Positions 48,420-64,000 of a stretch of 64,000 bases of DNA are shown piece after piece. The position numbers were made by a program, and so were the translations under genes. The stretch's first letter is position 1; every line of letters starts with the position of its first letter. The notes beneath the pieces are model-generated. The model did not search any database and was not told the origin of the DNA. It saw only the letters and a program-made list of their open reading frames with translations. The stretch covers positions 186,001 to 250,000 of IMG/VR virus record IMGVR_UViG_3300024262_006558; one strand, given 5' to 3'.

Positions 48420-48573
48420 TAAAAAGGGTGGATTATTTTCCACCTTTTTTATTGGGGAGAGTTCTCTGAAAAATTCCGCATTATCGTAAACCTTAACCTC
48501 GTAATACATACCAATAACAAAGTACATAATATCCCCTTCGCCGTATATATTGATGAATCTAAACAAAATCATC

Positions 48574-48894: not shown

Positions 48895-48971
48895 AAATAA
48901 GGTACATAATATCCCCCTCACCGTATATATTAGTGAATCAAAAGTTAAACAAAACCAAAACAAATACAATT

Positions 48972-49226: not shown

Positions 49227-49519
49227 AACCCTTCGGGGTTTTCACATTCAGACAAGGAAGGCGAATATGGCTGAATGCGTTAAGTCCGCGAAGTACGGCT
49301 AAGTATAACATAAGAAAAGAAATAAACTTAATTGAAAGCATAAAAAACCCATCTATTAAATTAGATGGGTTTTTTATTAGGGAGAGTTCTCTAAGTATTT
49401 CCGCAATATCGTAAACCTTAATCTCATGATACATATCCAGAAAAGCTGAAAAGTAAACTTTCCTATAAGTACATAGTTTCCCCATTACCGTATATATTGG
49501 TGAATCAGAATTTAAAGAG

Positions 49520-49996
49520 ATGAAAAAGATAGCATTAGTAGACGTATTCAATGGAGAGGGATATTCAGACCCTACGGTCAAAGTAGTAGAAGATTGTAGT
49601 CAAGAAATGTTTGACTCAATAGAGGAAATGCGTACTTCTTATGGGGGAGATGACTTCGAGCAAGTGGAGGGAGAGTTAGAAGATTATTCTGATACCGTTC
49701 ACATGGCTTTTAATGGGATAGGTCATTCAGAAGATGATAACGGAGCAATTCATGTTATTGAAATTCCTAAAGGGAGAGTTTTACTTTTGTTATTGCAACC
49801 GTGTGAATGTGAGGTTAAAGTTTTTGGAACGTATGATTCAAAAGAAGAAGCTGAAATTGCTATGAAAGAAGAGGTTTATAAGGATTCAAACGGATATGAT
49901 TCTGATGAAGTAGAAGAATGGGAAGAAGAAGAAATTACTGATAGCTTTTCAGCACATGGAAAAGATAGTTTTGATTTTTATAAAATCATTAGTTAG
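49520..49996 (+). CDS. Acidic hypothetical protein
   Basis: Very D/E-rich; behind repeat A. Confidence 0.65.
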   Translation: MKKIALVDVFNGEGYSDPTVKVVEDCSQEMFDSIEEMRTSYGGDDFEQVEGELEDYSDTVHMAFNGIGHSEDDNGAIHVIEIPKGRVLLLLLQPCECEVKVFGTYDSKEEAEIAMKEEVYKDSNGYDSDEVEEWEEEEITDSFSAHGKDSFDFYKIIS

Positions 49997-50046
49997 TACA
50001 TAGTTTCCCCATCACCGTATATATTGTTGAATCAAAAATTAAGAAC

Positions 50047-50289
50047 ATGGAATTATTAAATGCAAAAGAAATGGCAAATAAAGTAGTTATTGACGAAAGT
50101 TTTCTTAAAGAAATAACTAAAAAAATTAATGAAAACGCTAAAAGTGGACGAATAGCTATTAACTGCGGTTGGAGATGGTGTTCCGCACAAGCAAAGTCTC
50201 ACGCTATTAACGTTTTAAAAAGTAATGGATATGGTATTGGATTTAGTACAAATTGTCATGGTGTGGACAGGCTGATAGTGACTTGGTAA
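50047..50289 (+). CDS. Hypothetical protein
   Basis: Behind repeat A. Confidence 0.6.
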   Translation: MELLNAKEMANKVVIDESFLKEITKKINENAKSGRIAINCGWRWCSAQAKSHAINVLKSNGYGIGFSTNCHGVDRLIVTW

Positions 50290-50427
50290 CAATATATAAC
50301 TTAAAAATAAAGATAACTCTATAGGGTTATCTTTATTTTAGTTATCGGTACATAATATCCCCATCACCGTATATATTGGTGAATCGGACAAACAGATAGT
50401 TTGCCAGTAAACGAAACAAAATCAGTT

Positions 50428-50739
50428 ATGAATAAGTCGGAAGAAAAGTTACACAATCAAGCGGTTAAGTATTTGGAATCTATAGGAGCAAAAGCTATAG
50501 ACAAAGAAGATATGCAAAGGTCGTATACTCACGCTTATGAATGTGCTATTGGAACTTTGTTTTTGAGAGTGGATACAGAGGGAACTATTTTCACTTTGTT
50601 TGGAAACTTTTTAAATGACATAGAAAAAGCAAAGAAAGAAATTGGGCATTGGAAACACAATTTACATATGTCAAAGAAATGTTTGAAATTAGTAGGATAT
50701 AAGAATGCTATTGATGAGCATTTAGAAATCGTGTCATAA
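50428..50739 (+). CDS. Hypothetical protein
   Basis: Behind repeat A. Confidence 0.6.
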   Translation: MNKSEEKLHNQAVKYLESIGAKAIDKEDMQRSYTHAYECAIGTLFLRVDTEGTIFTLFGNFLNDIEKAKKEIGHWKHNLHMSKKCLKLVGYKNAIDEHLEIVS

Positions 50740-50822
50740 GTACATAGTCTCCCCATCACCGTATATATTGTTGAATCGGACAAACAACAAGTTTGCCAGT
50801 AAACGAAAAACAAACAAACATT

Positions 50823-51035
50823 ATGAAAAGAGCATTATTTATCGCATTAAAAGAAAACGGTCAAGTTGTAGATTACGTTGATAGCGTAGGGGTAAAGAAC
50901 AGAACCGTTGAAGACCTTATCGAAATGATTGTTGCTAAAGGCGACAAAGTAACCAACATGGTTATTAACAAAGTAAAAACAGCTCCAAAGGAGACTTGGA
51001 ACAAATTGAAAGCGGGATTCGCTAGAGCAAACTAA
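50823..51035 (+). CDS. Hypothetical protein
   Basis: Behind repeat A. Confidence 0.6.
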   Translation: MKRALFIALKENGQVVDYVDSVGVKNRTVEDLIEMIVAKGDKVTNMVINKVKTAPKETWNKLKAGFARAN

Positions 51036-51212
51036 TTGTTTGATTCAAAGATTCGGGGACTTGTTCCCCTTTCTTTTTGTTTGTGCATCTCTGAGTTTTT
51101 CCGCATCTTCGTAAACCTAATCTTTTGTTAACCAGATCCAGGAAAGCTGATCTTTCCCATAAGTACATAATATCCCCATGGTCGTATATATTACCGAATC
51201 AAAAGTAAAAAC

Positions 51213-51545
51213 ATGAACTATTCAAAAAACAATCGTTTAATAGCAGAATTTATGCAAGCGCCATTTTATTCTCCAAATGATTTTGATTTATATAGCACTA
51301 GCGGTTTAAATCATATCTTTAGAGATGTTGAAAGTGATGATGCTAATGCTCAACACTTCTTTAGAGGTGAACAAATGTTATTTCATAATTCATGGGACTG
51401 GTTAATTCCTGTAATACAAAAAATTAAAGAGATTGATTCTTCTATTGGTATAGAGCAAAGGCTTAATCCTTTTACTTACAACTTAGATTCTGTTTATGCT
51501 GGAGTTATTGAGTTCATTAAATCTTATAACCATAAAAGTACATAA
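51213..51545 (+). CDS. Hypothetical phage protein
   Basis: NNRLIAEFM..FHNSWDWLIPVIQKI; the stop is supplied by the next repeat A. Confidence 0.65.
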   Translation: MNYSKNNRLIAEFMQAPFYSPNDFDLYSTSGLNHIFRDVESDDANAQHFFRGEQMLFHNSWDWLIPVIQKIKEIDSSIGIEQRLNPFTYNLDSVYAGVIEFIKSYNHKST

Positions 51546-51590
51546 TTTCCCCCGTACCGTATATATTGGTGAATTTAAACAAAGCATATT

Positions 51591-52163
51591 ATGAAAACTA
51601 TTGAACTATCAAATAATCGAGTATTAAAGATTGAGCAAGATACAGATTTAGAAAGTCCACGTAATTGGGATAACTTAGCTAAAATGATTTTCTTTGGCAA
51701 GTATTCTCATTTAGGAGATAGTCACGAGATTAACAGTAGAGACTATGAAAGTTTTGAAGAAGTTGAAGCTGCAATCAAAAGAAAGTATAATGTAGCTTGC
51801 ATTAAAAAAATATATGGTTATTCGCATGGTGGATTAACAATAGCAACAACGCCTTTCTCTTGCTCTTGGGATAGTGGAGTTTTAGGATTTGCTATTATCA
51901 CAAAAGAAGACCTTAGAGAAAATTACTCTATCAAAAGAGTAACAAAACAATATGTTAAAAAAGGAAATGGGCATATTGAAGGTGAAGTAAAAACATTAGA
52001 TCAATTCATTAGCGGTGACGTTTACGGCTTCACGCTAGAGAAAGAGGGCGAATATGAAGATTCATGTTGGGGGTTCTATGGGGACAACGTATTAGAAAAT
52101 GGTATGCTTGACCACATAACCGAAGAAGTAAGTGAAGAAATTAAAAAAGCCTTAGCGGCTTAA
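51591..52163 (+). CDS. Hypothetical phage protein
   Basis: SPRNWDNL, YSHGG, WDSG, DSCWGFYG. Confidence 0.65.
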   Translation: MKTIELSNNRVLKIEQDTDLESPRNWDNLAKMIFFGKYSHLGDSHEINSRDYESFEEVEAAIKRKYNVACIKKIYGYSHGGLTIATTPFSCSWDSGVLGFAIITKEDLRENYSIKRVTKQYVKKGNGHIEGEVKTLDQFISGDVYGFTLEKEGEYEDSCWGFYGDNVLENGMLDHITEEVSEEIKKALAA

Positions 52164-52371
52164 AAAGAATTGTGTTTGATTCAAGAACTAAGGGGCGAAA
52201 GTCCCTTTTTTCTTTTTCTTGTTTCTCTGAGTTTTTCCGCATTTTCGTATACCTAGGTTTTAAATTCAAGTTTCCATTTTGGCAACAAAAAGCAAAAAAT
52301 TTCGTTATAGTAAAAGTACATAGTTTCCCCACCACCGTATATATTGGTGAATCAAAAAACAAATAGAAGTT

Positions 52372-52920
52372 ATGAAAAATGAAGTTAAAAGAATATCGCA
52401 AGAACAATTTATCGCACTTATCAACGGTAGTTCAGATGTAACAATCAACGGTAACACGTTTATCAACATCGAAACAATGACCGCAGTAAGTGATCTTGTT
52501 AAGCCAAAAAGCAATCCTTTTAACGGTGCAATGAAAATGAACATATCAAATGTTCAAATCTTTCAAAACAAAAACGGTTCATCTTATGAAGCGAAAGTTA
52601 AAAGAGAGATGGCGAAAGAGGGTAAAGATCCAGAGTCTTTCGAGTTACAGCCTAGAACGTGGGGCGAAAGAATCAAAAACACTCCATTAGTAATGCACAA
52701 AGGAGAATTTTACTTGGAAGTTATGTTTAACTCACAAGTGGGAGCAACAAAATTCTTCCACGAAGGAAAAGAAATTTCAGCCGAAACTTTAAAGCCTCAT
52801 AGAAGAATAAAGGTAGAAGGTAAGCAAGGAGGATTAGAAAACAAAGTAATCATTAGAACTTACAAAGTAGCTTCTATTCAATCAATCACTATCGCAAAAC
52901 AAAAGTATGTGATAATGTAA
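52372..52920 (+). CDS. Hypothetical protein
   Basis: Behind repeats B, C and A; terminator follows. Confidence 0.65.
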   Translation: MKNEVKRISQEQFIALINGSSDVTINGNTFINIETMTAVSDLVKPKSNPFNGAMKMNISNVQIFQNKNGSSYEAKVKREMAKEGKDPESFELQPRTWGERIKNTPLVMHKGEFYLEVMFNSQVGATKFFHEGKEISAETLKPHRRIKVEGKQGGLENKVIIRTYKVASIQSITIAKQKYVIM

Positions 52921-53069
52921 AAACAAAAAAGGAACTTTAATTAGTTCCTTTTTTTTGCTTGTTGTTTCTCTGAATTTTTCCGCAACTGCGTAAACCTAGT
53001 CCACTCCATAGGGAGAGGTGCAGATCACCATTAGTACATAATCTCCCCACCACCGTATATATTGTCGAG

Positions 53070-53333
53070 ATGAAAAGAAAACTATTCAAATACAAGTATA
53101 CTCGAAGAACTTTCTCTAAGGATGGAAGTTTTTGCACGGAGGAACATACTAGGGAGAGCGACTTTAGCTTAAAAGCTTTTGAGGGAGAGGTTGCTGACTG
53201 GCATCGACAAGGGCAAATGATGAAGCACAGAGACACTCTAAGCGAGATTCAAGGCTATGACTACTTCATCACTAAGGAGCAGGGAGAGTTTAACGAGAGA
53301 GCCTATAAAGTTAGAGTACTAGTAAGTACATAG
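53070..53333 (+). CDS. Hypothetical protein
   Basis: ATG directly after repeat A; stop lies inside the next copy. Confidence 0.55.
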   Translation: MKRKLFKYKYTRRTFSKDGSFCTEEHTRESDFSLKAFEGEVADWHRQGQMMKHRDTLSEIQGYDYFITKEQGEFNERAYKVRVLVST

Positions 53334-53377
53334 TCTCCCCATGGTCGTATATATTGGTGAATCTAAATAAAGGAATC

Positions 53378-53545
53378 ATGTATCAAAAACAATATGCAGA
53401 TAGAAGATTGGAATCTTTGATTAAAAGTCACATAGGAGCATCTGACTCTTATATAGAAGCGGTTGCTTGGGCTAGTTTTAGCGGAACTCATAGTATTACT
53501 GAAATAGCAAATGAGGTAGCTAGATTAAAAAAATGTCATTCATGA
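53378..53545 (+). CDS. Hypothetical protein
   Basis: Behind repeat A. Confidence 0.5.
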   Translation: MYQKQYADRRLESLIKSHIGASDSYIEAVAWASFSGTHSITEIANEVARLKKCHS

Positions 53546-53868
53546 AAAACATTATAATCATAGGAGCTGTAAGCGTTAGTCAATCAGTCCATATAATGAA
53601 TGTATTGGCTGGTATGGATACGGATATTTCTATTGTCGTAAACGCTAAAGGCGGCATGATGCAAAACTTCATGGATATGGAGAGAGGAACGAGTCTTTCA
53701 TCTCTTAAGTTTGATGTCACAAAAGATTATTGTTTAGAAGATATTCCCGAATTTGAATATGAAAAGATTGGAGACCGTAAACAGTTAACCTCAAAGCAGC
53801 GTAAAAATAGAAAAGCTAAAAGAAGGCAAGTAAAGCAGTCAAGGAATTTTATGCACAAAAGTACATAG
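53533..53868 (+). CDS. Hypothetical protein with basic C-terminus
   Basis: Stop lies inside the next repeat A. Confidence 0.55.
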   Translation: MSFMKNIIIIGAVSVSQSVHIMNVLAGMDTDISIVVNAKGGMMQNFMDMERGTSLSSLKFDVTKDYCLEDIPEFEYEKIGDRKQLTSKQRKNRKAKRRQVKQSRNFMHKST

Positions 53869-53914
53869 TCTCCCCATCACCGTATATATTAGTGAATCGA
53901 AAAACAAGACACAA

Positions 53915-54259
53915 ATGGAAAGTTCAGCATCTTATACGCATTTACCTTTAGCATCATTAGAAAGCTTATTACAAACGGCTTTAAAATCAGAGAATTATAA
54001 GAAGGCTCACCATGTGCAAAAAGCAATGGAGCATAACTTACTACATTCAACTATATCTTTCACTAAGAATGGAGATATGATATTGACTCCCGCATTTGAA
54101 GAGGTTGTTGAGTACTGGTTGAATGGTAAGGTTATTTTAAGAGAAAGCGTTGATGGGTCAAGTGTTGAATCCGTTGGATTAACTAGAGGGTTATTAGCTT
54201 TTGAGAATGAAGTTAGAGAAACTGAAATTAGTATCAACGTAAACATGAGGAGGGTATAA
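53915..54259 (+). CDS. Hypothetical protein with UVR-like motif
   Basis: LQTALKSENYKKAHHVQ. Confidence 0.55.
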   Translation: MESSASYTHLPLASLESLLQTALKSENYKKAHHVQKAMEHNLLHSTISFTKNGDMILTPAFEEVVEYWLNGKVILRESVDGSSVESVGLTRGLLAFENEVRETEISINVNMRRV

Positions 54260-54261
54260 TT

Positions 54262-54729
54262 ATGAATCATTTATCATTAGCAACAGTAGCAGCAATCATA
54301 TCGGATACAATCATAAAAAAGTTGTATAAGCACGTTCAGAAAAACATTGGAGAAGGTTATATCTATACGGTTGACCTTATTGGTCAATGGGCGGTGGAGT
54401 TTGAAACTAAGTATGGAGAGGTAGATTGGGAGGATTTCCAAATGAATCCTACTAAGTACGGATTTGATGAAAGTCATTGTGCATGGGATGATGCGGTTAT
54501 GTCATTCGCTAAAAAGAAATTTAAAGAGTTAAAGGGAGAGGTTGAGAAAGAGGTAAATGAGTTTACCCCTGTTCCCAAAGAAGAAAGAAGCTTAACGCAT
54601 TGTGTATGTCCTAAATGCGACAAGAAACATGAGTACACAAAGTACGCTTTGGCTCAAATGGCTTCGGGCGTTCATTTAAAGAAGGCTTGTGATTGTGGAA
54701 AGAATATTGTAATAGCACCATTTAAGTAG
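54262..54729 (+). CDS. Hypothetical protein with C-terminal zinc ribbon
   Basis: CPKC...CDCG. Confidence 0.6.
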   Translation: MNHLSLATVAAIISDTIIKKLYKHVQKNIGEGYIYTVDLIGQWAVEFETKYGEVDWEDFQMNPTKYGFDESHCAWDDAVMSFAKKKFKELKGEVEKEVNEFTPVPKEERSLTHCVCPKCDKKHEYTKYALAQMASGVHLKKACDCGKNIVIAPFK

Positions 54730-54959
54730 GGAGAGTTATGGAAAGATTAGGCTACTATGCAAAAGATGTTGAAGACAATTTGTTTCAATTCAAATGGGGA
54801 GAGGATGATAAATTCTATATCTTCAAGAATCAAAAGTATCATTTAGATAATCCTAATAACTATGTGATATTAGAGGTAGGTTTCTTTACGGCTGATAATC
54901 CAAGTACATAATATCCCCATCACCGTATATATTGTTGAATCAAAAAACAAACAAACATT

Positions 54960-55355
54960 ATGGAAAAGCATTTAGTAACAATTGAGTTCAGATATTCAAG
55001 TGCTCCCGATAAATTCGATTCTACTAGTCAAGACAAAGTAGTGACAATAGGGGTTTATGACGATTTTGATGAAGCTTGTAAAGAGGGAAACAAAGCCCTT
55101 GAATTACTTGAGAGTAAATTTGACATTCATACTTTCCCTCAAGGAAATAAGGCTAAAAAAGAAAGATTTAGTAAAAATGGCGGTTGCTTTGGAAGTAAGA
55201 ACACCTTAGTTTCAAACTTGGCTTATTTGAAAACACCATTTCAGTTTTTTGCAAAGATAGAAACATTAAAGCTTGATTCGTTAGAGGATGCAGTTAATGA
55301 AGTAGTTGATTCTGTAAAAGGATATAGAAAATATAAAGCCTCAATTGAGGATTAG
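54960..55355 (+). CDS. Hypothetical protein
   Basis: Behind repeat A. Confidence 0.6.
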   Translation: MEKHLVTIEFRYSSAPDKFDSTSQDKVVTIGVYDDFDEACKEGNKALELLESKFDIHTFPQGNKAKKERFSKNGGCFGSKNTLVSNLAYLKTPFQFFAKIETLKLDSLEDAVNEVVDSVKGYRKYKASIED

Positions 55356-55407
55356 TACATAGTTTCCCCATCACCGTATATATTTTTGAATAGAAACAAA
55401 AGCAATC

Positions 55408-55599
55408 ATGAAAAAGCAATTTAGAAAAACTTGGAGACACGAAGTAATTATTGAAGCTGAAACAAAAGAAGAAGCACAACAGATGTGGGAAAGTATTTCA
55501 CTTGGTAAACTTGACAAAGAAGTAGCTGATGGAGAAATATATTCACACGAATTTGTGGAGAACGTTTCTTTTGAAGATGAAAACTACGATGATGTATAA
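55408..55599 (+). CDS. Hypothetical protein
   Basis: Behind repeat A; followed by the first attC-like site. Confidence 0.6.
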   Translation: MKKQFRKTWRHEVIIEAETKEEAQQMWESISLGKLDKEVADGEIYSHEFVENVSFEDENYDDV

Positions 55600-55710
55600 T
55601 GGCATACAACGGCTTGGATATGCACCGTAAAGCGTAGCACAATGTTTAATCTTAACACTTCACTATCACGCTTAATGGTGTATAGGTTGTGTTAGCAAAT
55701 CGTTTTAATT

Positions 55711-55956
55711 ATGGAATTTAGGGAAGAAACAATACAAGAATTTAACTCATACAGAGATACAACATTAACAGAAGATATGACTTTTGCAGACGCAGTTGAA
55801 AATATTGAAAATGCAAATAATAGTTATTTTTATATTTCACTTAGTCAAAATGATGTTATTGAAGCTATTAATGATGAAAAAGAAATAGCAGAGCAGTTTG
55901 ATTTAGATTTAGTTTACTTGTTACCTCAAGGAATAGCTATTGCATTACAGGTGTAA
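55711..55956 (+). CDS. Cassette-borne acidic hypothetical protein
   Basis: Between GTTAGCAAA and TTTGCTAAC. Confidence 0.6.
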   Translation: MEFREETIQEFNSYRDTTLTEDMTFADAVENIENANNSYFYISLSQNDVIEAINDEKEIAEQFDLDLVYLLPQGIAIALQV

Positions 55957-56047
55957 TGTTTGCTAACGTTTAGTGTATGGTGTCGTTTGAGGCACGAAAA
56001 TGCACTATACATATTGTTGTGTGTAGTGCGGAATTTAAAAACTAAAC

Positions 56048-56236
56048 TTGATTAAAATGAAATACAAAAGTAAAACCACAAATAATATTGTAACCGTTAT
56101 TGAAAAAATAGGTGCTGGAATGTGTAGTAAAACATTAGGTATGACTTTAGTTATATTTAAGTTTGAAGACGATTTAGACTTTCATAGAGTAATGGAACAT
56201 AGAGAGTTCTATGCTAAATACGAAGAGGTAGAGTAG
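56048..56236 (+). CDS. Cassette-borne hypothetical protein
   Basis: Between GTTGTGTGTAGTGC and GCATTACACACAAC. Confidence 0.55.
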   Translation: MIKMKYKSKTTNNIVTVIEKIGAGMCSKTLGMTLVIFKFEDDLDFHRVMEHREFYAKYEEVE

Positions 56237-56336
56237 CATTACACACAACGTTTTGGCTATGTGCTGAACGTAGAGCAACGGAGTTTTGCATATAGGTAGT
56301 GTTATATGCTTTTATTAACAATTAAAATTAAACAAG

Positions 56337-56915
56337 ATGAAAATATTATTTCAAAGAGAAAGTGAAAACCTTAACTGTATTGTTTCTTGTAAAGACAATT
56401 CAAGAATAGAGACACCAAATGAGAGTAAGAGTTTATTGAATGAGAATGATTTATATGAAATTGCAAAATGGGGATTAGAAGGTGAATATTCATCGAGTGG
56501 GTGTTGGGATGATACTGATAATCTTGAAGATGCTATAAAATGTGCTGTTGAAGATTTTAAACTGTTTTTATCAAAACCATATCCGATTGAATTGGGTAAC
56601 ATACCAAATAATCCAATAATATATAGATTAGTTAGATTAAAAAACATAAATGACCTAAGAAAAAACGAATTAGGTAATAGTTGGTTTTCAAATCCAAACC
56701 AAATCCACGAAGAAGGGTTTTTTCAGATGTTAGATTATTTAAAACCGTTTAAAAATAAAGATGGTCAAGTTTATATAATCAAAGGACAGATAAATAAAGA
56801 CAATATTGATATGAAAAGAACTTTATGGGAACGAAGCACACAGTGGTGGGAAAACGAAATAGTGGTAATTGATGATTCCAACATAAAAATAATTTCAATC
56901 GAAGCACTATCTTAG
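56337..56915 (+). CDS. Cassette-borne hypothetical protein
   Basis: 192 aa between attC-like sites with non-matching ends. Confidence 0.6.
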   Translation: MKILFQRESENLNCIVSCKDNSRIETPNESKSLLNENDLYEIAKWGLEGEYSSSGCWDDTDNLEDAIKCAVEDFKLFLSKPYPIELGNIPNNPIIYRLVRLKNINDLRKNELGNSWFSNPNQIHEEGFFQMLDYLKPFKNKDGQVYIIKGQINKDNIDMKRTLWERSTQWWENEIVVIDDSNIKIISIEALS

Positions 56916-57061
56916 TATTGGTGCTAACGTTTAGTATAAGATTAGTTGCGATTAATAGCACTCACCTACGCAAACTACAACAGTTGATTAAAAGTAAAAT
57001 GATTAAATAACCAAACAACGTAGCAATTAATTTTATACGTTGTTATAAATCTGTAAAAATT

Positions 57062-57244
57062 ATGGAATGGATAGTAGTACCAAAGATTGGATTTAAACAT
57101 AAAATTGGTAACATGATATGTGGATTATTAAAAGTGATTGATGGATTGATTATGGTAATTTCATTCGGAAATTTAGCAACCAATTTTTGTTTAAATTTTA
57201 CAATAGTTAGAAAAAGGCACAACTTTATGTTAGACAATAAATAA
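57062..57244 (+). CDS. Cassette-borne hypothetical protein
   Basis: Between GTTATAAA and TTTATAAC. Confidence 0.55.
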   Translation: MEWIVVPKIGFKHKIGNMICGLLKVIDGLIMVISFGNLATNFCLNFTIVRKRHNFMLDNK

Positions 57245-57441
57245 TTTTTATTGTTTATAACACGAAAATAAAGATAAGCGTTAAGCGACCCGAAGGGTTA
57301 TCTTTTATTTTCTGTTATGATCTGATAGTCCAAGTACATAGTCTCCCCATCACCGTATATATTGGTGATGGGGAAACAGAAAAATGGTAATGGGTTATAC
57401 ATTGTGTTATAGCCTTTTAATTAACAATTAAATAAACAAAA

Positions 57442-57639
57442 ATGAAAGATTTAGATTTAACAAAAGACCAACACTTAATGAGTATTAGAGTTGATGGGGA
57501 ATGTATAGGACACGTTGAAATAGAGGATGGTAAAATAATTACAAATGGCACAGTAGGAGAAAACACTTACGAGAATTTTGTAGACTTAATATACGGACTA
57601 CAAGGGTTTGGGATAAGTGTAGATGACTTCTTCTTTTAA
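57442..57639 (+). CDS. Cassette-borne hypothetical protein
   Basis: Between GTTATAGCC and GGCTATAAC. Confidence 0.6.
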   Translation: MKDLDLTKDQHLMSIRVDGECIGHVEIEDGKIITNGTVGENTYENFVDLIYGLQGFGISVDDFFF

Positions 57640-57764
57640 TTGGCTATAACGGTTAGTATATGAGCCTGTACTTGTATGGCTTATATACATTGTTGTATGC
57701 TGGTGCGGTTTTGAAGCACTAATTTTCAAATAATAACTAAAGTAATAATTAAATATTTTGAGCG

Positions 57765-58130
57765 ATGGAAAAACAAAAAAATCAAACAAGTGCAATAAAT
57801 GCACAAGTTGGTGTAAAAAATGCACATACTGAACTAATCGGAAATTCCGAACAGTTGAACTTTACAAAAGGCGAATGGAAAGCCGAAAGAAAATCAGAAA
57901 ACCAAACTTGCCACTTAGTAAAAACAGGCGCTAAATACACTATTCACGTGTACGACTCTAAATATGGGATAGAAGAGTCTGAAAGTTGGCAAAATGCTAA
58001 ATTAATAGCAAAAGCACCTAATTTGCTGGAAATGCTAAAAAAAGTAACTGATGAATTAGAATTTTACGCAGGGAATGAAATTATAAAACACCCACTTATA
58101 AATGAATCAAGAAATTTAATGAAATTATGA
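57765..58130 (+). CDS. Cassette-borne hypothetical phage protein
   Basis: FTKGEW...NAKLIAKAPNLLEML; between GTTGTATGC and GCATACAAC. Confidence 0.6.
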   Translation: MEKQKNQTSAINAQVGVKNAHTELIGNSEQLNFTKGEWKAERKSENQTCHLVKTGAKYTIHVYDSKYGIEESESWQNAKLIAKAPNLLEMLKKVTDELEFYAGNEIIKHPLINESRNLMKL

Positions 58131-58805
58131 AAAACTTTATAACAAAAGCAAATGAGTTGAAAGTTAGTTATTCAACACTATACAAACTAATTTTAGGAAA
58201 AGAAATTGAGTGTATATTAGTTTGTGGTAGGTATTATTTTAATTAAGAGCGAGGGCAAAAATATTTAATTATGGTATTAGAAGCACTAAACTTGAATATT
58301 AGCACTAATGTAGCACTTGCATACAACACGAAAATAAAGATAAGCGTTAAGCGACCCGAAGGGTTATCTTTTATTTTCTGTTATGATCTGATAGTCCAAG
58401 TACATAGTCTCCCCATCACCGTATATATTGGTGATGGGGAAACAGAAAAATGGTAAAGCGTTATATGGATTGTATCTATATAACTAACGTGGGGAAATAA
58501 ATAGACGACTGATTTGAGTACTTGAAAAAGTTTAAAAGATTCCTAAGATGTTGGAATATCATAAAAAACTCTGTTAACTGTTGGGCAGTCGAGCCAATTG
58601 CGTCTATAACGTAGTATTGTTGAATACAATCTGTCCCAATTACCTAGGAAGTCTGATTAATTTCAGGCTTTCTTTTTTTATATTTGTTTCTCTGACTTTT
58701 TCCGCAACTGCGTAAACCGATCGATTATATTCCCTGGAGGAACCAATCAACAAAGTACATAATATCCCCATCACCGTATATATTGGTGAATCTAAACTTA
58801 AAGAC

Positions 58806-59228
58806 ATGAAAGACTTATTTGAACATTACGAAGAAATGCCTAGCCACCTTACCGCTATTTGCGATAAGTGGACAGAGAAGCATTTGGATGAAGGTTTAAG
58901 TTACATTGACTGTGCAGACTTCCTAAAAGAATTGGAAGCGATTGGATATACTTTCGAGTATGGTTTGGATGCAGAGCCGTATGGATTAGTTGAAATTTCT
59001 AAAAAGAAAGTATTTGTTTACTTGGCAAAACTTGGAGTTGTGGTAAGTACAGATGAAAATGGAGAAACGGAGGTTCAAAGAATTGACAGTCCCGAAGAGT
59101 TTAGAGATGACAACGAATTGTTTTTGGATTTCACTCCTCCATTATTGGAGAGCGACCAAGAAGCAAAAGACATTTATAATAGCATCACGCATTCAATGTG
59201 GATTCATTTAACTGGAGACAAAACGTAA
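58806..59228 (+). CDS. Hypothetical protein
   Basis: Behind repeat A. Confidence 0.6.
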   Translation: MKDLFEHYEEMPSHLTAICDKWTEKHLDEGLSYIDCADFLKELEAIGYTFEYGLDAEPYGLVEISKKKVFVYLAKLGVVVSTDENGETEVQRIDSPEEFRDDNELFLDFTPPLLESDQEAKDIYNSITHSMWIHLTGDKT

Positions 59229-59283
59229 AAGTACATAATATCCCCGCCACCGTATATATTGGTGAATCTAAACAAAGGAAATT

Positions 59284-59781
59284 ATGAAAACTATAAAAGT
59301 AAGACACTACAACGGAACGGAATTACAAGTTAGTCTTGGAGATGTTATAATAGGCGAAGGTACTATGGGAACATCAAAAGGTAGAGATGTAACTGGGGTA
59401 GTTCACAAAATAGAAGTAGGTAACATCACGTTGAAAAGAGGTAACACTTTACACTTGGTAGACCACACGACTTTAAAAGTTGCTCAAATGAGAGAAAACA
59501 ACTTTGAAGTGTATACTAAGAATCCGAAAACGGGTGAAGAAGGTTGGGAAATTGAAATGGTATCGGTAATAGCATATAGTACATATCACGCTAGGCAGAT
59601 ATTGAAGAAGTGGAATTTGTTTGACGAAGTTATCTTGTTTAATTTCTCTGCTCCACTCGCAGAATCTAACGAAGCAGGATTGTACACTTTAAATGAAACG
59701 ATGAAAGCAGTAGAAGGTACAATTCTTGAAACGGATTACCACAACAAATATTATAAACCATTAGCACACATTAAAGCATAA
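59284..59781 (+). CDS. Hypothetical protein
   Basis: Behind repeat A. Confidence 0.6.
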   Translation: MKTIKVRHYNGTELQVSLGDVIIGEGTMGTSKGRDVTGVVHKIEVGNITLKRGNTLHLVDHTTLKVAQMRENNFEVYTKNPKTGEEGWEIEMVSVIAYSTYHARQILKKWNLFDEVILFNFSAPLAESNEAGLYTLNETMKAVEGTILETDYHNKYYKPLAHIKA

Positions 59782-59955
59782 GTGTTTGATTCAGAAATTT
59801 AGAGGGCGAGAGTCCTCTATTTTTCGTTATTGATTTCTCTGAGTTTTTCCGCAGCTGCGTAAACCATACGATCGGAATCCCTGGAGGATCCGATCATGCA
59901 ACAAAGTACATAGTTTCCCCGTTAGTGTATATATTACTGAATCAAAAGAATTATA

Positions 59956-60762
59956 ATGAATATCCCAAAAGAACAATTAAAGCGAATAGTGGACTTACTT
60001 AATAGCGATGTCTTTGCGGTAACGTTTAGACTGGAAACGGGTAATAAGTTAGAAACGGCAGAACAAGCCGTTGACGCGCTCTTTGATGGGGTAGTCACTT
60101 TAGAGGATATGTTCTTTTGTAGATTGGACGAGTCATTTAGACACGCAACCCAAGAGGTAAATGATACATGGGAGGATAATATGGAAATGTTTGCTCCAGA
60201 AAACTATCTTCCAAGTGAAAAAACATTACCCGAAGGTGGAGCGTGGATAAAGGTTAGGCATGAAACTGGATACCAATTACATTTTGCAAAGGTTTCAAAT
60301 AGAAAAAGAAGATTTGCCGAAGAGATAAAGAAAGTTTCTCAAACTCTCAATAAAGAGATGGAAAAAGTAAGAGAGTTCAATTGTTCTATGGACAAAGCTG
60401 AAGCTCTCCACAAAAAGATGGACATTCTTTTTGTTTATCATGAGATTGATATTCCTTTATATGAAGTTAGATATCAGAGAACTAAAACAAAAGTCGAATA
60501 TTTAAACCCATTTCAATATGAGATTTGCAGCGATGAAGATTTGCAAATGATATTGGATGCGGTTAGAAAGAAAACCTTTGGCGTTAAGATGAGAAATCTT
60601 TACACGTCAGTAAACAAGGACCAAATCTTTTATTTGAGAAGCAGAGGTATAAGCGAGCAAGAAGCGATGATTATGGCTAACTTGAAACAATGTTACTTTG
60701 ATGTTGATATTATGGGCATGAACGAGGTTTTTAATGAGTCATTCAGACTTGTAAAAGCATAA
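59956..60762 (+). CDS. Hypothetical protein with SufB/SufD C-terminal-like motif
   Basis: VNKDQIFYLRSRGISEQEAM. Confidence 0.6.
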   Translation: MNIPKEQLKRIVDLLNSDVFAVTFRLETGNKLETAEQAVDALFDGVVTLEDMFFCRLDESFRHATQEVNDTWEDNMEMFAPENYLPSEKTLPEGGAWIKVRHETGYQLHFAKVSNRKRRFAEEIKKVSQTLNKEMEKVREFNCSMDKAEALHKKMDILFVYHEIDIPLYEVRYQRTKTKVEYLNPFQYEICSDEDLQMILDAVRKKTFGVKMRNLYTSVNKDQIFYLRSRGISEQEAMIMANLKQCYFDVDIMGMNEVFNESFRLVKA

Positions 60763-60826
60763 CTCTCCCCATAGTACATAATATCCCCCGTACCGTATAT
60801 ATTGGTGAATCTAAACAAACAAAGTC

Positions 60827-61156
60827 ATGAATATTATAGTTTTCACATTAAACACTAAAGCGAAATCAGAGTACAGAAATGGAAATGGTGAAATTGATCG
60901 CAATGAATATCCAGTTCATATCAAATTAGATACTGATTATTCACATGGTTTTATTTTGAAAATTGAAGACACTCCAGGCTCTTGGCATATGTCTACTCTT
61001 ATGGGTGATCGTTATGGTAATGCATACAATGAAGACAATCAAGTTTTAAGTATTCATGGTACGGAGTGGATGTGCGTTAACATATTTGATTTAATCAAGG
61101 AAGCGAATGAAACGCTAGAAAAAATGGATATGAAAGTAATTCCCGACAATAGATAA
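60827..61156 (+). CDS. Hypothetical protein
   Basis: Behind repeat A. Confidence 0.6.
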   Translation: MNIIVFTLNTKAKSEYRNGNGEIDRNEYPVHIKLDTDYSHGFILKIEDTPGSWHMSTLMGDRYGNAYNEDNQVLSIHGTEWMCVNIFDLIKEANETLEKMDMKVIPDNR

Positions 61157-61214
61157 CGGAAGTACATAATATCCCCACCACCGTATATATTGGTGAATCT
61201 AAACAAAACTCATT

Positions 61215-61730
61215 ATGGCAACAGATTATAAAAAATTAGCACTAGAAGCATTAAGTTTCATTAGAGATAACACCGACAACGAAGCTTTTCAAAGCACCGT
61301 TGATGGAACGGAGATTGACATAGATAAAACTATCCAAGAACTTACTCCTATCTTGCCAGATGTTGACTTTACATTATCTCAAATAGTCGAAGGCAAAAGA
61401 CAACTTAATCTAGCATCTCAAATTGTTAAACAAAACATGAAACTTCTTATCATGCACTACATGAAAGAGGCGGGCTTAGAAGAAATAATCATTGAAGATT
61501 TAGATGTTATCCACAGTGATGCAGGAATTTCAGCTGGAGATTATATGGATTCGGTTACTAGAGTCCTAGCAAATGGAGATTACTTCTATACTCACAATGG
61601 CGAAAGAAGCGAAGAAACGGAAGCAGGCGGAATTGAAAGCTTGCCAGTAAATTCTTTAGACAAATTATTAAAAAGATTACAGGATTATAATGGTAGTAAT
61701 TTAGCATTAAGCACAACGCTTACTGTATGA
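61215..61730 (+). CDS. Hypothetical protein
   Basis: Behind repeat A; followed by an attC-like site. Confidence 0.6.
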   Translation: MATDYKKLALEALSFIRDNTDNEAFQSTVDGTEIDIDKTIQELTPILPDVDFTLSQIVEGKRQLNLASQIVKQNMKLLIMHYMKEAGLEEIIIEDLDVIHSDAGISAGDYMDSVTRVLANGDYFYTHNGERSEETEAGGIESLPVNSLDKLLKRLQDYNGSNLALSTTLTV

Positions 61731-61853
61731 TTAGAATTTGAAACTAAATCTTAGTTGTTGCTAACGTACCGTATAAGAAGCGTTGAGAGGTACGAACAAT
61801 GATTTTTATACATTGTTATATGCTTTTATTAATAACAATTAAAATTAAACAAG

Positions 61854-62102
61854 ATGAAAAAAGTAACCCATTGCATAGTATATAGATTACACAAAGACAA
61901 TTCACCAACTGTAATAGATTGTTCTTCGGAAAAGGAACAAGGTGAACAGTTATCTAAAATAATAAAAGAGGGGTATAAAAATGCGTATAAAGCAACACCT
62001 GAACAAGCTACGAAAGTCTTGAATGATTACGGAAAACAATTTGAACCTAAGCCATTAACACAACAGGAAAGATGGGATAATTGGGCTATAGGTAAAGGGT
62101 AA
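61854..62102 (+). CDS. Cassette-borne hypothetical protein
   Basis: Between GTTATATGC and GCATATAAC. Confidence 0.6.
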   Translation: MKKVTHCIVYRLHKDNSPTVIDCSSEKEQGEQLSKIIKEGYKNAYKATPEQATKVLNDYGKQFEPKPLTQQERWDNWAIGKG

Positions 62103-62196
62103 TTGCATATAACGAATTGTATATGAGGCGTGAGGAACGAATGACTGCATATACGCTGTTATATGCTTTTTTATTAACTAATTAAAACAGATTAAA

Positions 62197-62520
62197 ATGA
62201 TTATAGGATTAATACAAGGAAATAGAGTTGAATTAGGAGAAACTGATAACGGATATGTATACAAAAACAGTTTTGCGTTTGACAAAAAGACTGATGAAAT
62301 ATGTTATATACCAGAGTTAGGGATTGAGGGAGATATAATTACAGAAGACACTTCTGTTTATAGATATTCCGACTTTTTAGAAATAGCTACTGATTATGTA
62401 AAAAGAAATGGGTTAAGTAATACACCTCAAGATATGGCTGAACAATTATTTGAATGTGTTGATTGGCAACATCCAAGTACATTACTTGATGAATGGGAAA
62501 TTCATTTAGAAGATGAGTAA
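62197..62520 (+). CDS. Cassette-borne hypothetical phage protein
   Basis: ICYIPE..LFECVDWQHPSTL; between GTTATATGC and GCATATAAC. Confidence 0.6.
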   Translation: MIIGLIQGNRVELGETDNGYVYKNSFAFDKKTDEICYIPELGIEGDIITEDTSVYRYSDFLEIATDYVKRNGLSNTPQDMAEQLFECVDWQHPSTLLDEWEIHLEDE

Positions 62521-62604
62521 TTGCATATAACGGTTAGTATATGAAATGTGGAGCAAAGCGGAATTTTTTATATACCGTGTTATGCTCTTTTAAATTAGAT
62601 AATT

Positions 62605-62760
62605 ATGATAAGTTTTAAATATTACAAGAATTACGGAATTGAATACTGCTTTGGTAGTGCAACTGTACAGGGATTTATGGGTAGACCTCTTAAAACTTTT
62701 ACAGGTGGATGTATAAAGGCAGTAGAAAAAGCAGAAAAGTATATAGATAGCCTTAATTGA
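62605..62760 (+). CDS. Cassette-borne 51-aa protein (not in ORF track)
   Basis: MISFKYYKNYGIEYCFG...YIDSLN*; between GTTATGCTC and GAGCATAAC. Confidence 0.55.
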   Translation: MISFKYYKNYGIEYCFGSATVQGFMGRPLKTFTGGCIKAVEKAEKYIDSLN

Positions 62761-62858
62761 GCATAACGGTTAGCGTATAGTGACGTGAAACGAAGTGAAA
62801 TGCACTTATACGCCTTGTTGTGGTGAGTACGGGTTATTAACCAATAAATTAAATTGAA

Positions 62859-63080
62859 ATGATACAAGACAAATTAGAAAATCAAATCCATAACGTAATT
62901 ATGGAAACGGCAAGAGAACCTAAACTTATTGTAATGCACCCACAAACATGGGTTGACCTTGCAAAAGAAGTTACTGGCAAAGATGGGATGACAATAAATA
63001 GATACGACCCAAATATGAAGTACAGAGGGATTAAGGTGATTAGAAGTTTGGATTTGTTGGAGGGTGAGTTTGAAATGTAG
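62859..63080 (+). CDS. Cassette-borne hypothetical protein
   Basis: Between GTTGTGGTGAGTAC and GTATTCACCACAAC. Confidence 0.6.
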   Translation: MIQDKLENQIHNVIMETAREPKLIVMHPQTWVDLAKEVTGKDGMTINRYDPNMKYRGIKVIRSLDLLEGEFEM

Positions 63081-63205
63081 TATTCACCACAACACGAAAA
63101 TAAAGATAAGCGTTAAGCGACCCGATAGGGTTATCTTTTATTTTCTGTTATCGGTACATAATATCCCCCGTACCGTATATATTGGTGAACTTAAATAAAA
63201 ACATC

Positions 63206-63472
63206 ATGGCAAAGCAAAACTTTAAAAAGAGATATAGAGATTTAGAGGTACAAGTATTCGCAACCCTTAGGGATGCGATTGAGAATAGTGAGTTTAAATC
63301 TGAACACTTAAGCGAAAAAGCTATTAAGGTAAATGTGTTTGATTATACAGAATTATCAATACTTAATGACCGCTTGGTATTATTAGACCATAAAGGTTTC
63401 CATTATTCAATTTATTCTGATTGTACGTTGGAAGATTTAATTGACATCATTAACAAATTGGAAGATGAATAA
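63206..63472 (+). CDS. Hypothetical protein
   Basis: Behind repeat A. Confidence 0.6.
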   Translation: MAKQNFKKRYRDLEVQVFATLRDAIENSEFKSEHLSEKAIKVNVFDYTELSILNDRLVLLDHKGFHYSIYSDCTLEDLIDIINKLEDE

Positions 63473-64000
63473 ATATTCAAATACCGTAAAAATGTTAGGT
63501 GTAGATACTAGAAGCTCATTTCTTTTTGGGGATGCGTGCGACAATTTAATTAAGTGTAGCAGTAAAGAAATCCAACAAGAAGCAAAGGACGAAATTAGTC
63601 AGATACTAATCAAGCTAAAGCCCGTTGAAGGCGGTATAACTATTCAAATGGTTGACGCGCTTTTACATGGTATGATTACGGAACATGCACACAAAGATAC
63701 TTTGCCTTTAAAAGGGTTTAGTATAAAAGTACATAATTCCCCCGAAGCCGTATATATTGGTGAATCAAAAGAAAAGAATATGCACACTATAAGAAAAAGA
63801 ACGCCAGTATTTGAAACCGATGACTTTCAAGAAGTATTCAATACAGATTCTTACAATGTATTTGTGAAACCTGAATTTGAATCTAAATTCAAAAGCTCTT
63901 TATCTTATCCTGATATCGTACTAAGAAAGTATGACCACGAAAATGGAATGACTACAGTAGTGGCGGACTATCAAAACAAAATAGGAAGCAAGATGCTTGC
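63465..64000 (+). CDS. Partial ORF reading in frame through repeat A into the ORF starting at 63780
   Basis: No stop from ATG 63465 to the window end; in-frame ATG at 63780. Confidence 0.5.
   Translation, partial: MNKYSNTVKMLGVDTRSSFLFGDACDNLIKCSSKEIQQEAKDEISQILIKLKPVEGGITIQMVDALLHGMITEHAHKDTLPLKGFSIKVHNSPEAVYIGESKEKNMHTIRKRTPVFETDDFQEVFNTDSYNVFVKPEFESKFKSSLSYPDIVLRKYDHENGMTTVVADYQNKIGSKML

What the first reader, a model, noticed from the sequence alone, without database searches (positions are those of the whole stretch)
57259..58456. Fused attC-like hairpin plus promoter unit, duplicated exactly and closing each cassette run
Seen: each cassette run ends in the same site (AAC-ACGAAAATAAAGATAA...TTATCTTTTATTTTCT-GTT at 57259, 58325 and 63091), followed within about 20 nt by repeat A. 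A shorter version at 50298-50348 has no cassettes. 57259-57390 and 58325-58456 are identical over 132 bp and flank two cassettes. In these two copies repeat A forms a perfect hairpin, TCCCCATCACC-GTATATATT-GGTGATGGGGA. Inference: this is a phage-resident docking site into which cassettes insert, linking the two repeat systems.
Basis: partly seen in the sequence, partly recalled or inferred. Interest (0 to 1): 0.65.

Follow-up and report, generated by a model that had tools for sequence, protein, structure and literature searches.

The report
Duplicated terminator-promoter unit in jumbo phage
The 132-bp repeat is a hairpin "end-cap" that closes each run of small phage genes, joined to the phage's repeated promoter; this resembles the terminator-promoter motifs that T4-type phages use to shuffle gene modules, and it shows no sign of being an integron-style docking site.

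Summary
57259-57390 and 58325-58456 are identical over 132 nt. Each unit has a 60-nt A/U-rich hairpin (T), a 15-nt spacer, and one copy of repeat A.

- **Repeat A** occurs 58 times in this 388-kb phage record, at a fixed distance from start codons, so it reads as a promoter. Only these two copies form the 11-bp hairpin.
- **T** closes all seven small-ORF arrays of the source contig. Three of these are not followed by repeat A. T shares its outer AAC...GTT stem with the cassette junction hairpins. It carries a small GC hairpin and a U tract, like an intrinsic terminator.
- **Recombinases:** no tyrosine, serine or Y1 recombinase was found. A RecA/UvsX-like gene and a gp46/47-like gene are present.
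- **Relatives show module shuffling.** One has promoter plus the 58806 gene with no array and no T. Another has a different array, then T, then the promoter and the same gene. In others the 121-aa cassette keeps the same 3' flank, which is followed by a junction hairpin or by unrelated sequence. These breaks fall at the AAC.

I read the unit as PeSL-like punctuation (PeSL: promoter-early stem-loop of T4-type phages) and portable homology. T travels with the arrays and is not a resident docking site. A hairpin-directed exchange mechanism is not excluded.

The parts
57259..57318 (+). T element, copy 1. A 60-nt A/U-rich hairpin runs from AACACGAAAATAAAGATA to TATCTTTTATTTTCTGTTAT. It encloses a conserved AAGCGTTAAGCGA bulge and a small GC hairpin ACCC-GAA-GGGT that is followed by a U tract.
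57319..57333 (+). 15-nt spacer GATCTGATAGTCCAA, found only in the two duplicated units.
57334..57390 (+). P*, a variant copy of repeat A (promoter-like). The core GTACATAGTCTCCCC-N6-GTATATATTGGTGA is intact. The downstream AATCAAA is replaced by TGGGGAAAC, which gives an 11-bp hairpin at 57344-57374.
57391..58324 (+). Module enclosed by the two units. It holds a junction 3' arm and leader (57391-57441), ORF 57442-57639 (65 aa), junction hairpin 57640-57705, ORF 57765-58130 (121 aa, PF27050/phrog_1273), ORF 58127-58246 (39 aa), and a 3' flank that ends in the 5' arm TTGCATACAAC.
58325..58456 (+). Second, identical T-spacer-P* unit (T 58325-58384, P* 58400-58456).
58457..58754 (+). ORF-less stretch after the second unit. 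It contains degenerate junction arms ('empty' 3' arm plus 5' arm), a canonical terminator at 58646-58673, and the D5 motif. The ordinary repeat A at 58755, which drives ORF 58806-59228, follows.
63091..63151 (+). T element, copy 3 (loop GATA). It is followed after 2 nt by a canonical repeat A at 63154. It closes the array 61162-63080.
50298..50345 (+). Short T, a perfect A/U-GC hairpin without the AAGCGTTAAGCGA bulge. It is followed after 2 nt by repeat A at 50348. It closes a single-ORF unit.
55355..57258 (+). Array 1. Repeat A at 55355 is followed by five small ORFs. They are separated by junction hairpins, including 55957-56029 and 56239-56314, and the array is closed by T copy 1.
61162..63090 (+). 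Array 3. Repeat A at 61162 is followed by five ORFs. They are separated by junction hairpins at 61755-61828, 62103-62171, 62521-62592 and 62757-62830, and the array is closed by T copy 3.
44313..64000 (.). Window part of the promoter-dense hyperplastic block. It holds 30 plus-strand and 2 divergent minus-strand copies of repeat A. The block continues to genome position 274633.

Best explanation
The 132-bp unit is composite regulatory punctuation in the hyperplastic small-gene region of a 388-494 kb jumbo phage. The phage has a T4-type portal and terminase and probably infects a host that does not use Shine-Dalgarno sites. The first half, T, is a specialised member of the hairpin family that follows each small ORF. 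It shares that family's outer AAC...GTT stem, but its interior is an A tract, a GC mini-hairpin and a U tract. I infer that it ends or attenuates transcription and/or forms a stable mRNA 3' end at the end of each array. The second half is a copy of the phage's repeated promoter, which restarts transcription for the next genes. I infer that host RNA polymerase uses it with a host or phage sigma factor; three sigma-70-family genes are present. Because T, the junction hairpins and the promoter repeats are short, conserved and present many times, they also act as portable homology. Modules bounded by them are gained, lost and reordered by the phage's own homologous-recombination machinery. This matches what was shown for the PeSL terminator/promoter motifs of T4-type phages. 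The exact duplicate flanking a 934-bp module is the footprint of one recent event of this kind, either integration of a circle or unequal exchange between two T-P* units. The 11-bp hairpin in P* arose before the duplication. It could have formed by quasi-palindrome correction of the usual 4-bp repeat, but that was not tested. Shown here: the anatomy, copy numbers, positions, structural covariation, absence of the tested recombinases, and shuffling among relatives. Inferred: termination, promoter activity and the recombination pathway.
For: Repeat A as a promoter. There are 56 plus-strand copies within 43 kb of co-oriented ORFs, plus 2 divergent copies at the left edge. Two conserved blocks sit at fixed spacing, and the start codon lies 50-56 nt downstream in most copies. 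The same motif occurs in front of homologous genes in relatives L028 (13 copies in 9 kb) and L030 (6 copies in 3 kb). T as an end element. All 7 copies in the contig lie at the 3' end of co-oriented small-ORF arrays. The terminator scan flags GACCCGAAGGGTT + ATCTTTTATT. The fold has z of -3.7 to -7.7. 93% of cells are paired, and the inner stem shows compensatory CCC/GGG to CUC/GAG changes. T elements also close arrays in L030, L001 and possibly L019 and L023. Kinship with PeSL. The record has a T4-type portal and terminase, a RecA/UvsX-like gene and a gp46/47-like gene. Other repeat A copies are preceded by ordinary terminators. The genes are ORFans. Shuffling. L028 has 54262h-P-58806h with no array. 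L030 has a different array, then T, P and 58806h, and then 60827h and 53915h in another order. The 121-aa cassette is 86-96% identical at nucleotide level in L033, L034 and L038 but has unrelated neighbours on both sides. One junction element is 94% identical in L001 and L028 between unrelated ORFs. The promoter in front of 58806h in L030 has a 5' half like P* and a 3' half like the promoter at 58755, as expected from a crossover inside the promoter. No Tyr, Ser or Y1 recombinase was found. PeSL properties are taken from PMC2839356 and PMC4122927.
Against: T's GC stem has only 4-5 bp. The 11-nt bulge AAGCGTTAAGCGA, almost invariant across unrelated phages, is not explained by termination. In L001, L011 and L012 the next ORF starts 3-50 nt after T with no repeat A, so T cannot be a tight terminator there. 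A hybrid in L019 keeps the bulge and GC hairpin but lacks a clear U tract. Repeat A matches neither the sigma-70 consensus nor the Bacteroidota -33/-7 consensus (and my own reading). There is no RNA data. The informative breakpoints cluster within a few nt of AAC (3 of 3 cases). This could equally reflect a site- or structure-directed process. No empty allele of this exact site was seen in the source sample: unitig depths were about 40-41x for the module and 43-47x for the flanks, from contigs only.
Confidence: 0.6

Rival explanations
1. Hairpin-directed cassette exchange. The AAC...GTT hairpins, T included, are recombination sites. They are cut or resolved at the AAC by a structure- or sequence-specific activity, either host-encoded or an unrecognised phage enzyme. 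This would make the arrays an integron-like cassette system that needs no IntI.
For: The element layout resembles attC: outer and inner inverted repeats with asymmetric spacers, and conserved AAC/GTT triplets. Cassettes have the form [3' arm-leader-ORF-5' arm], and their neighbours differ between relatives. Breaks fall right after AAC, AACAC or AACG in the 3 informative cases. ORF-less '3' arm + 5' arm' units look like emptied cassettes. Clusters of attC sites without an integrase have been reported in virulent phages (PMC9892861).
Against: The record has no Tyr, Ser or Y1 recombinase. The full RYYYAAC/GTTRRRY consensus is not met. Junction hairpins fold better on the sense strand in 14 of 15 cases, with an invariant G.U pair, which points to RNA. 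The crossover lies at the 5' arm and not at R'. T and J share only about 9 nt, so a break at AAC is also what microhomology would give. The 132-nt duplicate extends far beyond any hairpin.
Confidence: 0.15
2. T is mainly an RNA processing, stability or protein-binding element and not a terminator. For example, it could be an RNase III-type site or the operator of a phage RNA-binding protein. Its adjacency to the promoter would then only reflect tight gene packing.
For: The AAGCGTTAAGCGA bulge is conserved, while the stem covaries and the loops vary. In relatives, ORFs follow T directly without a promoter. The long imperfect stems with internal loops resemble the RNase III sites between T7 early genes (my own knowledge, not tested here). 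The related junction hairpins show a sense-strand folding bias.
Against: T itself shows no strand asymmetry. The U tract directly after the GC hairpin is kept in nearly all copies. T is always the last element of an array and never an internal one. No Rfam family matches.
Confidence: 0.18
3. T is a small mobile palindromic element (MITE/REP-like) that inserts on its own.
For: A sharply bounded block of about 60 nt is 90-98% identical in phage contigs that share no detectable proteins with this genome.
Against: There are no target-site duplications. T is always co-oriented with the flanking ORFs and always at an array end. No transposase was found. The pattern is rare in IMG/VR and absent from 185,579 prokaryote genomes.
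Confidence: 0.04
4. The duplication is an assembly artefact.
For: The window comes from a metagenome assembly, and repeats can be mis-joined.
Against: An independent assembly of the same sample gives unitigs for all four junction types at equal depth: 57020-57287, 57361-57675, 57667-58348 and 58427-58782, at 40-44x.
Confidence: 0.03

Closest known systems
PeSL (promoter-early stem-loop) composite terminator/promoter motifs of T4-type phages (Arbiol et al. 2010, PMC2839356; Comeau et al. 2014, PMC4122927)
   Same: Both have a stem-loop directly upstream of a repeated promoter. Both occur in many copies concentrated in a hyperplastic region of small ORFans. In both, modules bounded by the motifs differ in presence and order between relatives. 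In both, direct repeats of the motif flank a module, which is the substrate or product of mini-circle exchange. The phage here encodes RecA/UvsX-type and gp46/47-type recombination proteins.
   Different: The phage is not a Tevenvirinae member: it has a family A polymerase and a 388-494 kb genome. The promoter is not sigma-70-like. The stem-loop is a 60-nt sequence-conserved element with a conserved bulge. It is related to a second, promoter-less hairpin family, and that family, not the promoter, bounds single cassettes. Mini-circles were not tested.
Integron attC/attI sites and attC clusters without integrase (CALINs) in phages (Qi et al. 2023, PMC9892861)
   Same: Imperfect hairpins with AAC...GTT ends follow promoter-less small ORFs in co-oriented arrays. 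Cassette content varies between relatives.
   Different: There is no IntI or any other tyrosine recombinase. The full core consensus is not met. The breakpoints lie at the 5' arm. The better-folding strand is the sense strand. T sits at the 3' end of arrays and is absent from the empty state.
Intrinsic (Rho-independent) terminators with an A tract and a U tract
   Same: T has a GC hairpin followed by a U-rich tract, with an upstream A tract that pairs with it. It lies at the 3' end of co-oriented genes, and a promoter follows it.
   Different: The GC stem is very short, there is an 11-nt conserved bulge, and the nucleotide sequence is conserved across unrelated phages.
RNase III processing hairpins between phage T7 early genes (my own knowledge)
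   Same: Both are sequence-related imperfect hairpins of about 60-80 nt with internal loops, placed in each intergenic space of a polycistronic early transcript.
   Different: No cleavage data exist here, and the resemblance was not tested. It concerns mainly the junction hairpins.

Membership tests
PeSL (T4-type phages) | A stem-loop lies immediately upstream of a repeated early-type promoter, with a start codon at fixed distance. | tested here: met
   T or ordinary terminators precede repeat A by 2-15 nt (or about 60-90 nt where the D5 motif intervenes). The ATG lies 50-56 nt after the motif start.
PeSL (T4-type phages) | Many copies are concentrated in a hyperplastic region of small ORFans. 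| tested here: met
   58 copies occur within genome positions 230-275 kb, and the ORFs have no Pfam or PHROG function.
PeSL (T4-type phages) | Indels, replacements and reordering between relatives occur at the motifs. | tested here: met
   L028, L030, L033, L034 and L038 compared with the window. The relatives are 67-87% identical, not near-identical pairs.
PeSL (T4-type phages) | The promoter resembles sigma-70 (-35/N17/-10). | tested here: not met
   Repeat A is not picked up by the sigma-70 scan. It has a TATATATT block but a GTACATA..TCCCC upstream block.
PeSL (T4-type phages) | The host phage belongs to the T4 superfamily. | tested here: inconclusive
   Portal_T4 and Terminase_6N are present and gp46/47-like and RecA-like genes are present, but the DNA polymerase is family A.
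PeSL (T4-type phages) | Mini-circles form by recombination between flanking motifs. | not testable with these tools
   This needs inverse PCR or raw and long reads. Only contigs were available.
Integron attC / attI | An IntI tyrosine recombinase is encoded next to the array. | tested here: not met
   PF00589 gave no match in the 388-kb record, while the controls were positive. The 105 kb of the source contig outside the record could not be searched.
Integron attC / attI | R'' matches RYYYAAC and R' matches GTTRRRY. | tested here: not met
   Only the AAC/GTT triplets are conserved. Typical arms are CATATAAC / GTTATATG, and for T they are (Y)AACAC / CTGTTAT.
Integron attC / attI | The site works as a folded bottom strand. 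| tested here: inconclusive
   Junction hairpins fold better on the top (sense) strand in 14 of 15 cases, by a mean of 6.7 kcal/mol, with 53 G.U pairs against 16. T is symmetric. RNA energy parameters were used, not DNA parameters.
Integron attC / attI | The docking site (attI) is resident, lies at the promoter-proximal end, and persists when the array is empty. | tested here: not met
   T lies at the 3' end. The empty state in L028 lacks T. T is replaced by other sequence in L034 and L038.
Integron attC / attI | The site is recognised by attC covariance models (IntegronFinder/HattCI) and by IntI in an attC x attI assay. | not testable with these tools
   Those models are not available here. 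Rfam gave no match.
Intrinsic terminator | A GC-rich stem is followed directly by a U tract, in the direction of transcription. | tested here: met
   GACCCGAAGGGTT + ATCTTTTATT was flagged at 57287, 58353 and 63119. The stem has only 4-5 bp.
Intrinsic terminator | Transcripts end there. | not testable with these tools
   No RNA run holds this phage.

The most novel reading that the evidence does not exclude
A clade of very large phages keeps its ORFan genes as cassettes of the form [3' hairpin arm-leader-ORF-5' hairpin arm]. These cassettes are exchanged at the AAC of a conserved structured element by a hairpin-directed process that needs no integron integrase. One possible route is cleavage of the extruded hairpin followed by recombinational repair. 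T would be the array's end-cap. This would be a phage-borne functional analogue of the integron, built on elements that double as RNA signals.
Probability: 0.15. Interest if true: 0.8.

Novelty: new variant of a known kind. Interest (0 to 1): 0.5.

Why it matters
The finding extends the 'mobile regulatory cassette' principle beyond the classical T4-like coliphages and vibriophages. It now covers a clade of environmental jumbo phages (subsurface, marine and wastewater samples) that use a different promoter. It also adds a second, promoter-less hairpin family that bounds single genes. These hairpins and the T end-cap are not in Rfam. They stay 85-98% identical at nucleotide level between phages whose proteins are unrelated or at most 56% identical. 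They could therefore serve as markers for this phage group. They also give a tractable system for asking how large phages acquire and turn over ORFan genes, and whether short structured signals act as recombination hotspots.

Tried and rejected
- **Phage database:** a search of the INPHARED phage records for the 56-64 kb stretch gave only a 46-nt chance-level hit.
- **Rfam:** scans of the window at 44-64 kb and of the two other array regions gave nothing except a sub-threshold RefA9 hit on a bidirectional terminator. No tRNAs were found.
- **Minus-strand ORFs:** the apparent small minus-strand ORF family that overlaps repeat A and the D5 motif was rejected. The translations are full of stops.
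- **General hairpin promoter (N4-like):** rejected. The N6 spacer is variable, and 38 of 57 copies have 0-1 bp of stem.
- **Phage-encoded RNA polymerase:** no beta-subunit homologue was found. The T7-type search was uninformative because its control did not ring.
- **Pattern scans for T:** there were 2 IMG/VR loci, 5 metagenome loci (4 of them on the source contig) and none in prokaryote genomes. An exact repeat A pattern and one junction pattern gave nothing in IMG/VR.
- **L002:** this is the same phage from another sample (99.96% identity, no indels), so it says nothing about polymorphism.
- **Reads:** only Logan contigs were available. No joint skipping the module was seen, and the 'joints' listed were cross-matches between repeat copies.
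- **Other searches:** The search for related loci with the 121-aa protein found nothing in IMG/VR. The source contig outside the record could not be searched for integrases. Homologues of ORF 56337-56915 in other large phages (L025, L027) are not flanked by these elements.
Full report
**Setting**

The window is bases 186001-250000 of a 388,594-bp IMG/VR virus record with 34% GC. The record was cut from a 494-kb metagenome contig, Ga0210003_1000004, from a subsurface sample. It encodes:
- a T4-type portal that carries an intein, and a T4-type large terminase;
- a fused gp47/gp46-like nuclease, a RecA/UvsX-like protein and a family A DNA polymerase;
- three sigma-70-family proteins.

It has no RNA polymerase beta homologue. 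The search for a T7-type polymerase was uninformative, because its control found nothing anywhere. Shine-Dalgarno-like words upstream of long ORFs are no more frequent than at random positions (8% against 9.6%). From general knowledge, this suggests a Bacteroidota-type host; that is an inference.

**Observation**

57259-57390 and 58325-58456 are identical over exactly 132 nt, and the flanks diverge at once. Each unit has three parts:
- T (60 nt): AACACGAAAATAAAGATA-AGCGTTAAGCGA-CCCGAAGGG-TTATCTTTTATTTTCTGTTAT.
- A 15-nt spacer found only in these two copies.
- P*, one copy of repeat A.

T also lies at 63091-63151. A short form without the AGCGTTAAGCGA insert lies at 50298-50345. In both places a canonical repeat A follows after 2 nt. 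The perfect 11-bp hairpin in P* is real. It is a private feature of these two copies: among 57 scorable copies the stem has 0-1 bp in 38, 2-5 bp in 17, and 11 bp only here.

**Repeat A**

The consensus is GTACATAnTnTCCCC-N6-GTATATATTgGTGAAtcAAA, with the start codon 50-56 nt after the motif start in most copies.
- There are 56 copies on the plus strand between genome positions 231418 and 274633.
- Two divergent copies lie at the left edge, in front of minus-strand ORFs.
- The window shows 32 matches against 0.84 expected by chance.
- The N6 spacer is variable and is not systematically complementary to GGTG, so the element is not a hairpin in general.

Its position, orientation and two fixed blocks make it a promoter; this is an inference. 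It is neither sigma-70-like nor obviously Bacteroidota sigma-A-like, so a phage sigma factor may read it. The same motif precedes homologous genes in relatives L028 (13 copies in 9.25 kb, variant GTATACATT) and L030/L031 (6 copies in 3.1 kb).

**The T element**

A covariance model built from nine T sequences finds only six copies in the record, five long and one short. A seventh lies on the source contig outside the record (L012). All seven sit at the 3' end of a run of small co-oriented ORFs. The copies at genome 86572 (minus strand), genome 122269 (plus strand) and in L012 are not followed by repeat A.

The structure holds up:
- 93% of cells are paired.
- The inner stem shows compensatory CCC/GGG to CUC/GAG changes.
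- The A/U stem of the diverged copy L011b also carries compensatory changes.

The inner GC hairpin with its U tract is picked up as terminator-like.

T occurs at 90-98% identity, with sharp ends at AAC and GTTAT, in contigs that share no detectable proteins with this genome (L001, L011). It also occurs in the true relative L030, where it closes a different array and abuts repeat A. The AAGCGTTAAGCGA bulge is nearly invariant, with one G>T change in L030. I cannot explain it.

**Junction hairpins and their link to T**

Within the arrays almost every ORF is followed, starting at or next to its stop codon, by an element of this form: TTGCATATAACGG-TTA-GTATATG-(loop, often ..CGT..GAGG.ACGAA..ATG)-CATATAC-NNN-TGTTATATGC. 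A short leader and the next ATG come after it.
- A model of this element finds 13-14 copies in the record, and all lie in the three array regions.
- Further copies occur in at least seven other IMG/VR contigs and in L028, L030 and L038.
- The outer stem is AACG/TGTT, with a G.U pair in all 12 aligned copies.
- The sense strand folds better than the antisense strand in 14 of 15 elements, by a mean of 6.7 kcal/mol, with 53 G.U pairs against 16.

This strand bias points to a function in the mRNA. T has the same outer stem (AACA/TGTT) and the same kinds of 5' prefix (GCATACAAC, CATTACACACAAC, GCTAAC). L019 carries a hybrid with junction arms around the AAGCG..AGCGAC-CCGGAGGG core.

**Tests of the docking-site idea**

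*Recombinases.* No tyrosine recombinase, serine recombinase or Y1 transposase was found in the 388-kb record, and the controls were positive.

*Empty and filled states upstream of gene 58806-59228.*
- L028 has 53915h-54262h, then 29 nt, the promoter and 58806h. It has no array and no T.
- L030 has a promoter, three small ORFs unrelated to ours separated by junction hairpins, T, 3 nt, the promoter and 58806h. Homologues of 60827 and 53915 follow in a different order.
- This genome has two arrays and two T-P* units, then an ORF-less remnant, an ordinary terminator, the D5 motif, the promoter and 58806.

So the polymorphism exists. But T comes and goes with the array, and the element common to all states is the promoter.

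*Is T itself exchangeable?* The 121-aa cassette is 86-87% identical over 57680-58134 and 96-98% identical over its 3' flank in L033, L034 and L038. After the shared ...GTAGCACTTGCATACAAC come different sequences:
- T in this genome;
- a junction-type arm (GGTTTGCAAAC...) and another ORF in L038;
- unrelated A-rich sequence in L034.

The upstream neighbour is also unrelated. On the left, homology starts at the 3' inner arm (57680).

*Extent of the duplicate.* The 132-nt identity includes the private spacer and the whole P*. This fits a duplication or insertion through homologous exchange between two complete units. It does not fit a crossover at a hairpin core.

*Trace of a promoter crossover.* The L030 promoter in front of 58806h is GTACATAGTCTCCCC (the P* type) in its 5' half. 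Its 3' half and leader match our promoter at 58755. This is the pattern expected if a crossover inside the promoter separated P* from its gene.

**Reads**

Only the source sample holds the region, and only as contigs. Unitigs support all four junction types at 40-44x. The module (40-41x) is as deep as its flanks (43-47x). The duplication is therefore real and the module is present in essentially all copies. A minor empty allele below about 10% cannot be judged. A freshwater run carries a 513-nt stretch that is 99.6% identical to ORF 56337-56915. The match ends at 56929, just after the GCTAACG of the following hairpin.

**Interpretation**

The closest known system is the PeSL of T4-type phages. 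PeSLs are composite stem-loop/early-promoter motifs that are concentrated in hyperplastic regions. They flank ORFans and mediate deletion, insertion and replacement through recombination between copies, with mini-circles shown by inverse PCR (PMC2839356 and PMC4122927). The unit studied here has that architecture, context and comparative behaviour.

It differs in four ways:
- the phage lineage;
- the promoter type;
- the long, sequence-conserved end-cap hairpin with its unexplained bulge;
- a second, promoter-less hairpin family that bounds single cassettes.

What remains open is whether the breakpoints cluster at AAC only because that is all T and the junction hairpins share, or because a hairpin-directed process exists. 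Three of three informative cases break there. Since attC clusters without an integrase have been reported in virulent phages (PMC9892861), I keep that reading at about 15%.

**Verdict**

I rate it a new variant of a known kind, with interest 0.5.

Noticed in passing
window 48444-59865 (7 copies, e.g. 52205-52253 and 58670-58718); 20 copies genome-wide: A third repeat, the D5 motif TCTCTGAnTTTTTCCGCAnnTnCGTAAACC, lies 60-90 nt upstream of many repeat A copies. It is often just after a canonical terminator and is also present in relative L030. Minus-strand translations are full of stops, so it is non-coding. Its function is unknown.
   Followed up: partly
genome 119826-120132 (L004:7826-8132), outside the window: A 307-nt intergenic stretch inside a cassette array folds at -80.6 kcal/mol. 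It has no Rfam match and may be a structured RNA.
   Followed up: partly
window 55974-56062: This junction hairpin with its leader, up to the ATG, is 94% identical to elements in L001 and L028 that sit between unrelated ORFs. Other junction copies within this genome are only about 50% alike. This implies recent horizontal spread of this particular regulatory cassette.
   Followed up: yes
window 58457-58490; genome 86622-86682 and 121678-121733: ORF-less units consist of a junction 3' arm followed directly by a 5' arm (e.g. TGTTGTATGGC...GGCATACAAC). They look like cassettes that have lost their ORF.
   Followed up: partly
window 56337-56915: This 192-aa ORF belongs to a widespread family of unknown function. 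There are 91 homologues, some on contigs of about 600 kb. In those other phages the gene is not flanked by the hairpin elements.
   Followed up: partly
genome 52456-56097 (L010:2456-6097, minus strand): The T4-type portal gene is interrupted by an intein that carries an HNH endonuclease domain.
   Followed up: no
whole record; L012: IMG/VR classes the 388-kb record as a provirus cut from a 494-kb contig. However, a further cassette array with a T element lies outside the cut (L012). The trimmed part may therefore also be phage, giving a genome of about 0.5 Mb.
   Followed up: partly
window 29740-29949; genome 10111-10296 (minus strand) and 267997-268212 (plus strand): There are three sigma-70-family genes. 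One lies at the distal end of the repeat A block. They are candidates for reading the phage-specific promoters.
   Followed up: no
window 49340-49377: A bidirectional terminator-like perfect hairpin gives a sub-threshold Rfam RefA9 hit (E = 0.05). The hit is probably just the terminator.
   Followed up: no
L033:150-375 and L038:360-580: In relatives, the junction hairpin upstream of the 121-aa cassette carries a loop of 100-120 nt where this genome has 10 nt. The hairpin loops therefore tolerate or accumulate insertions.
   Followed up: no
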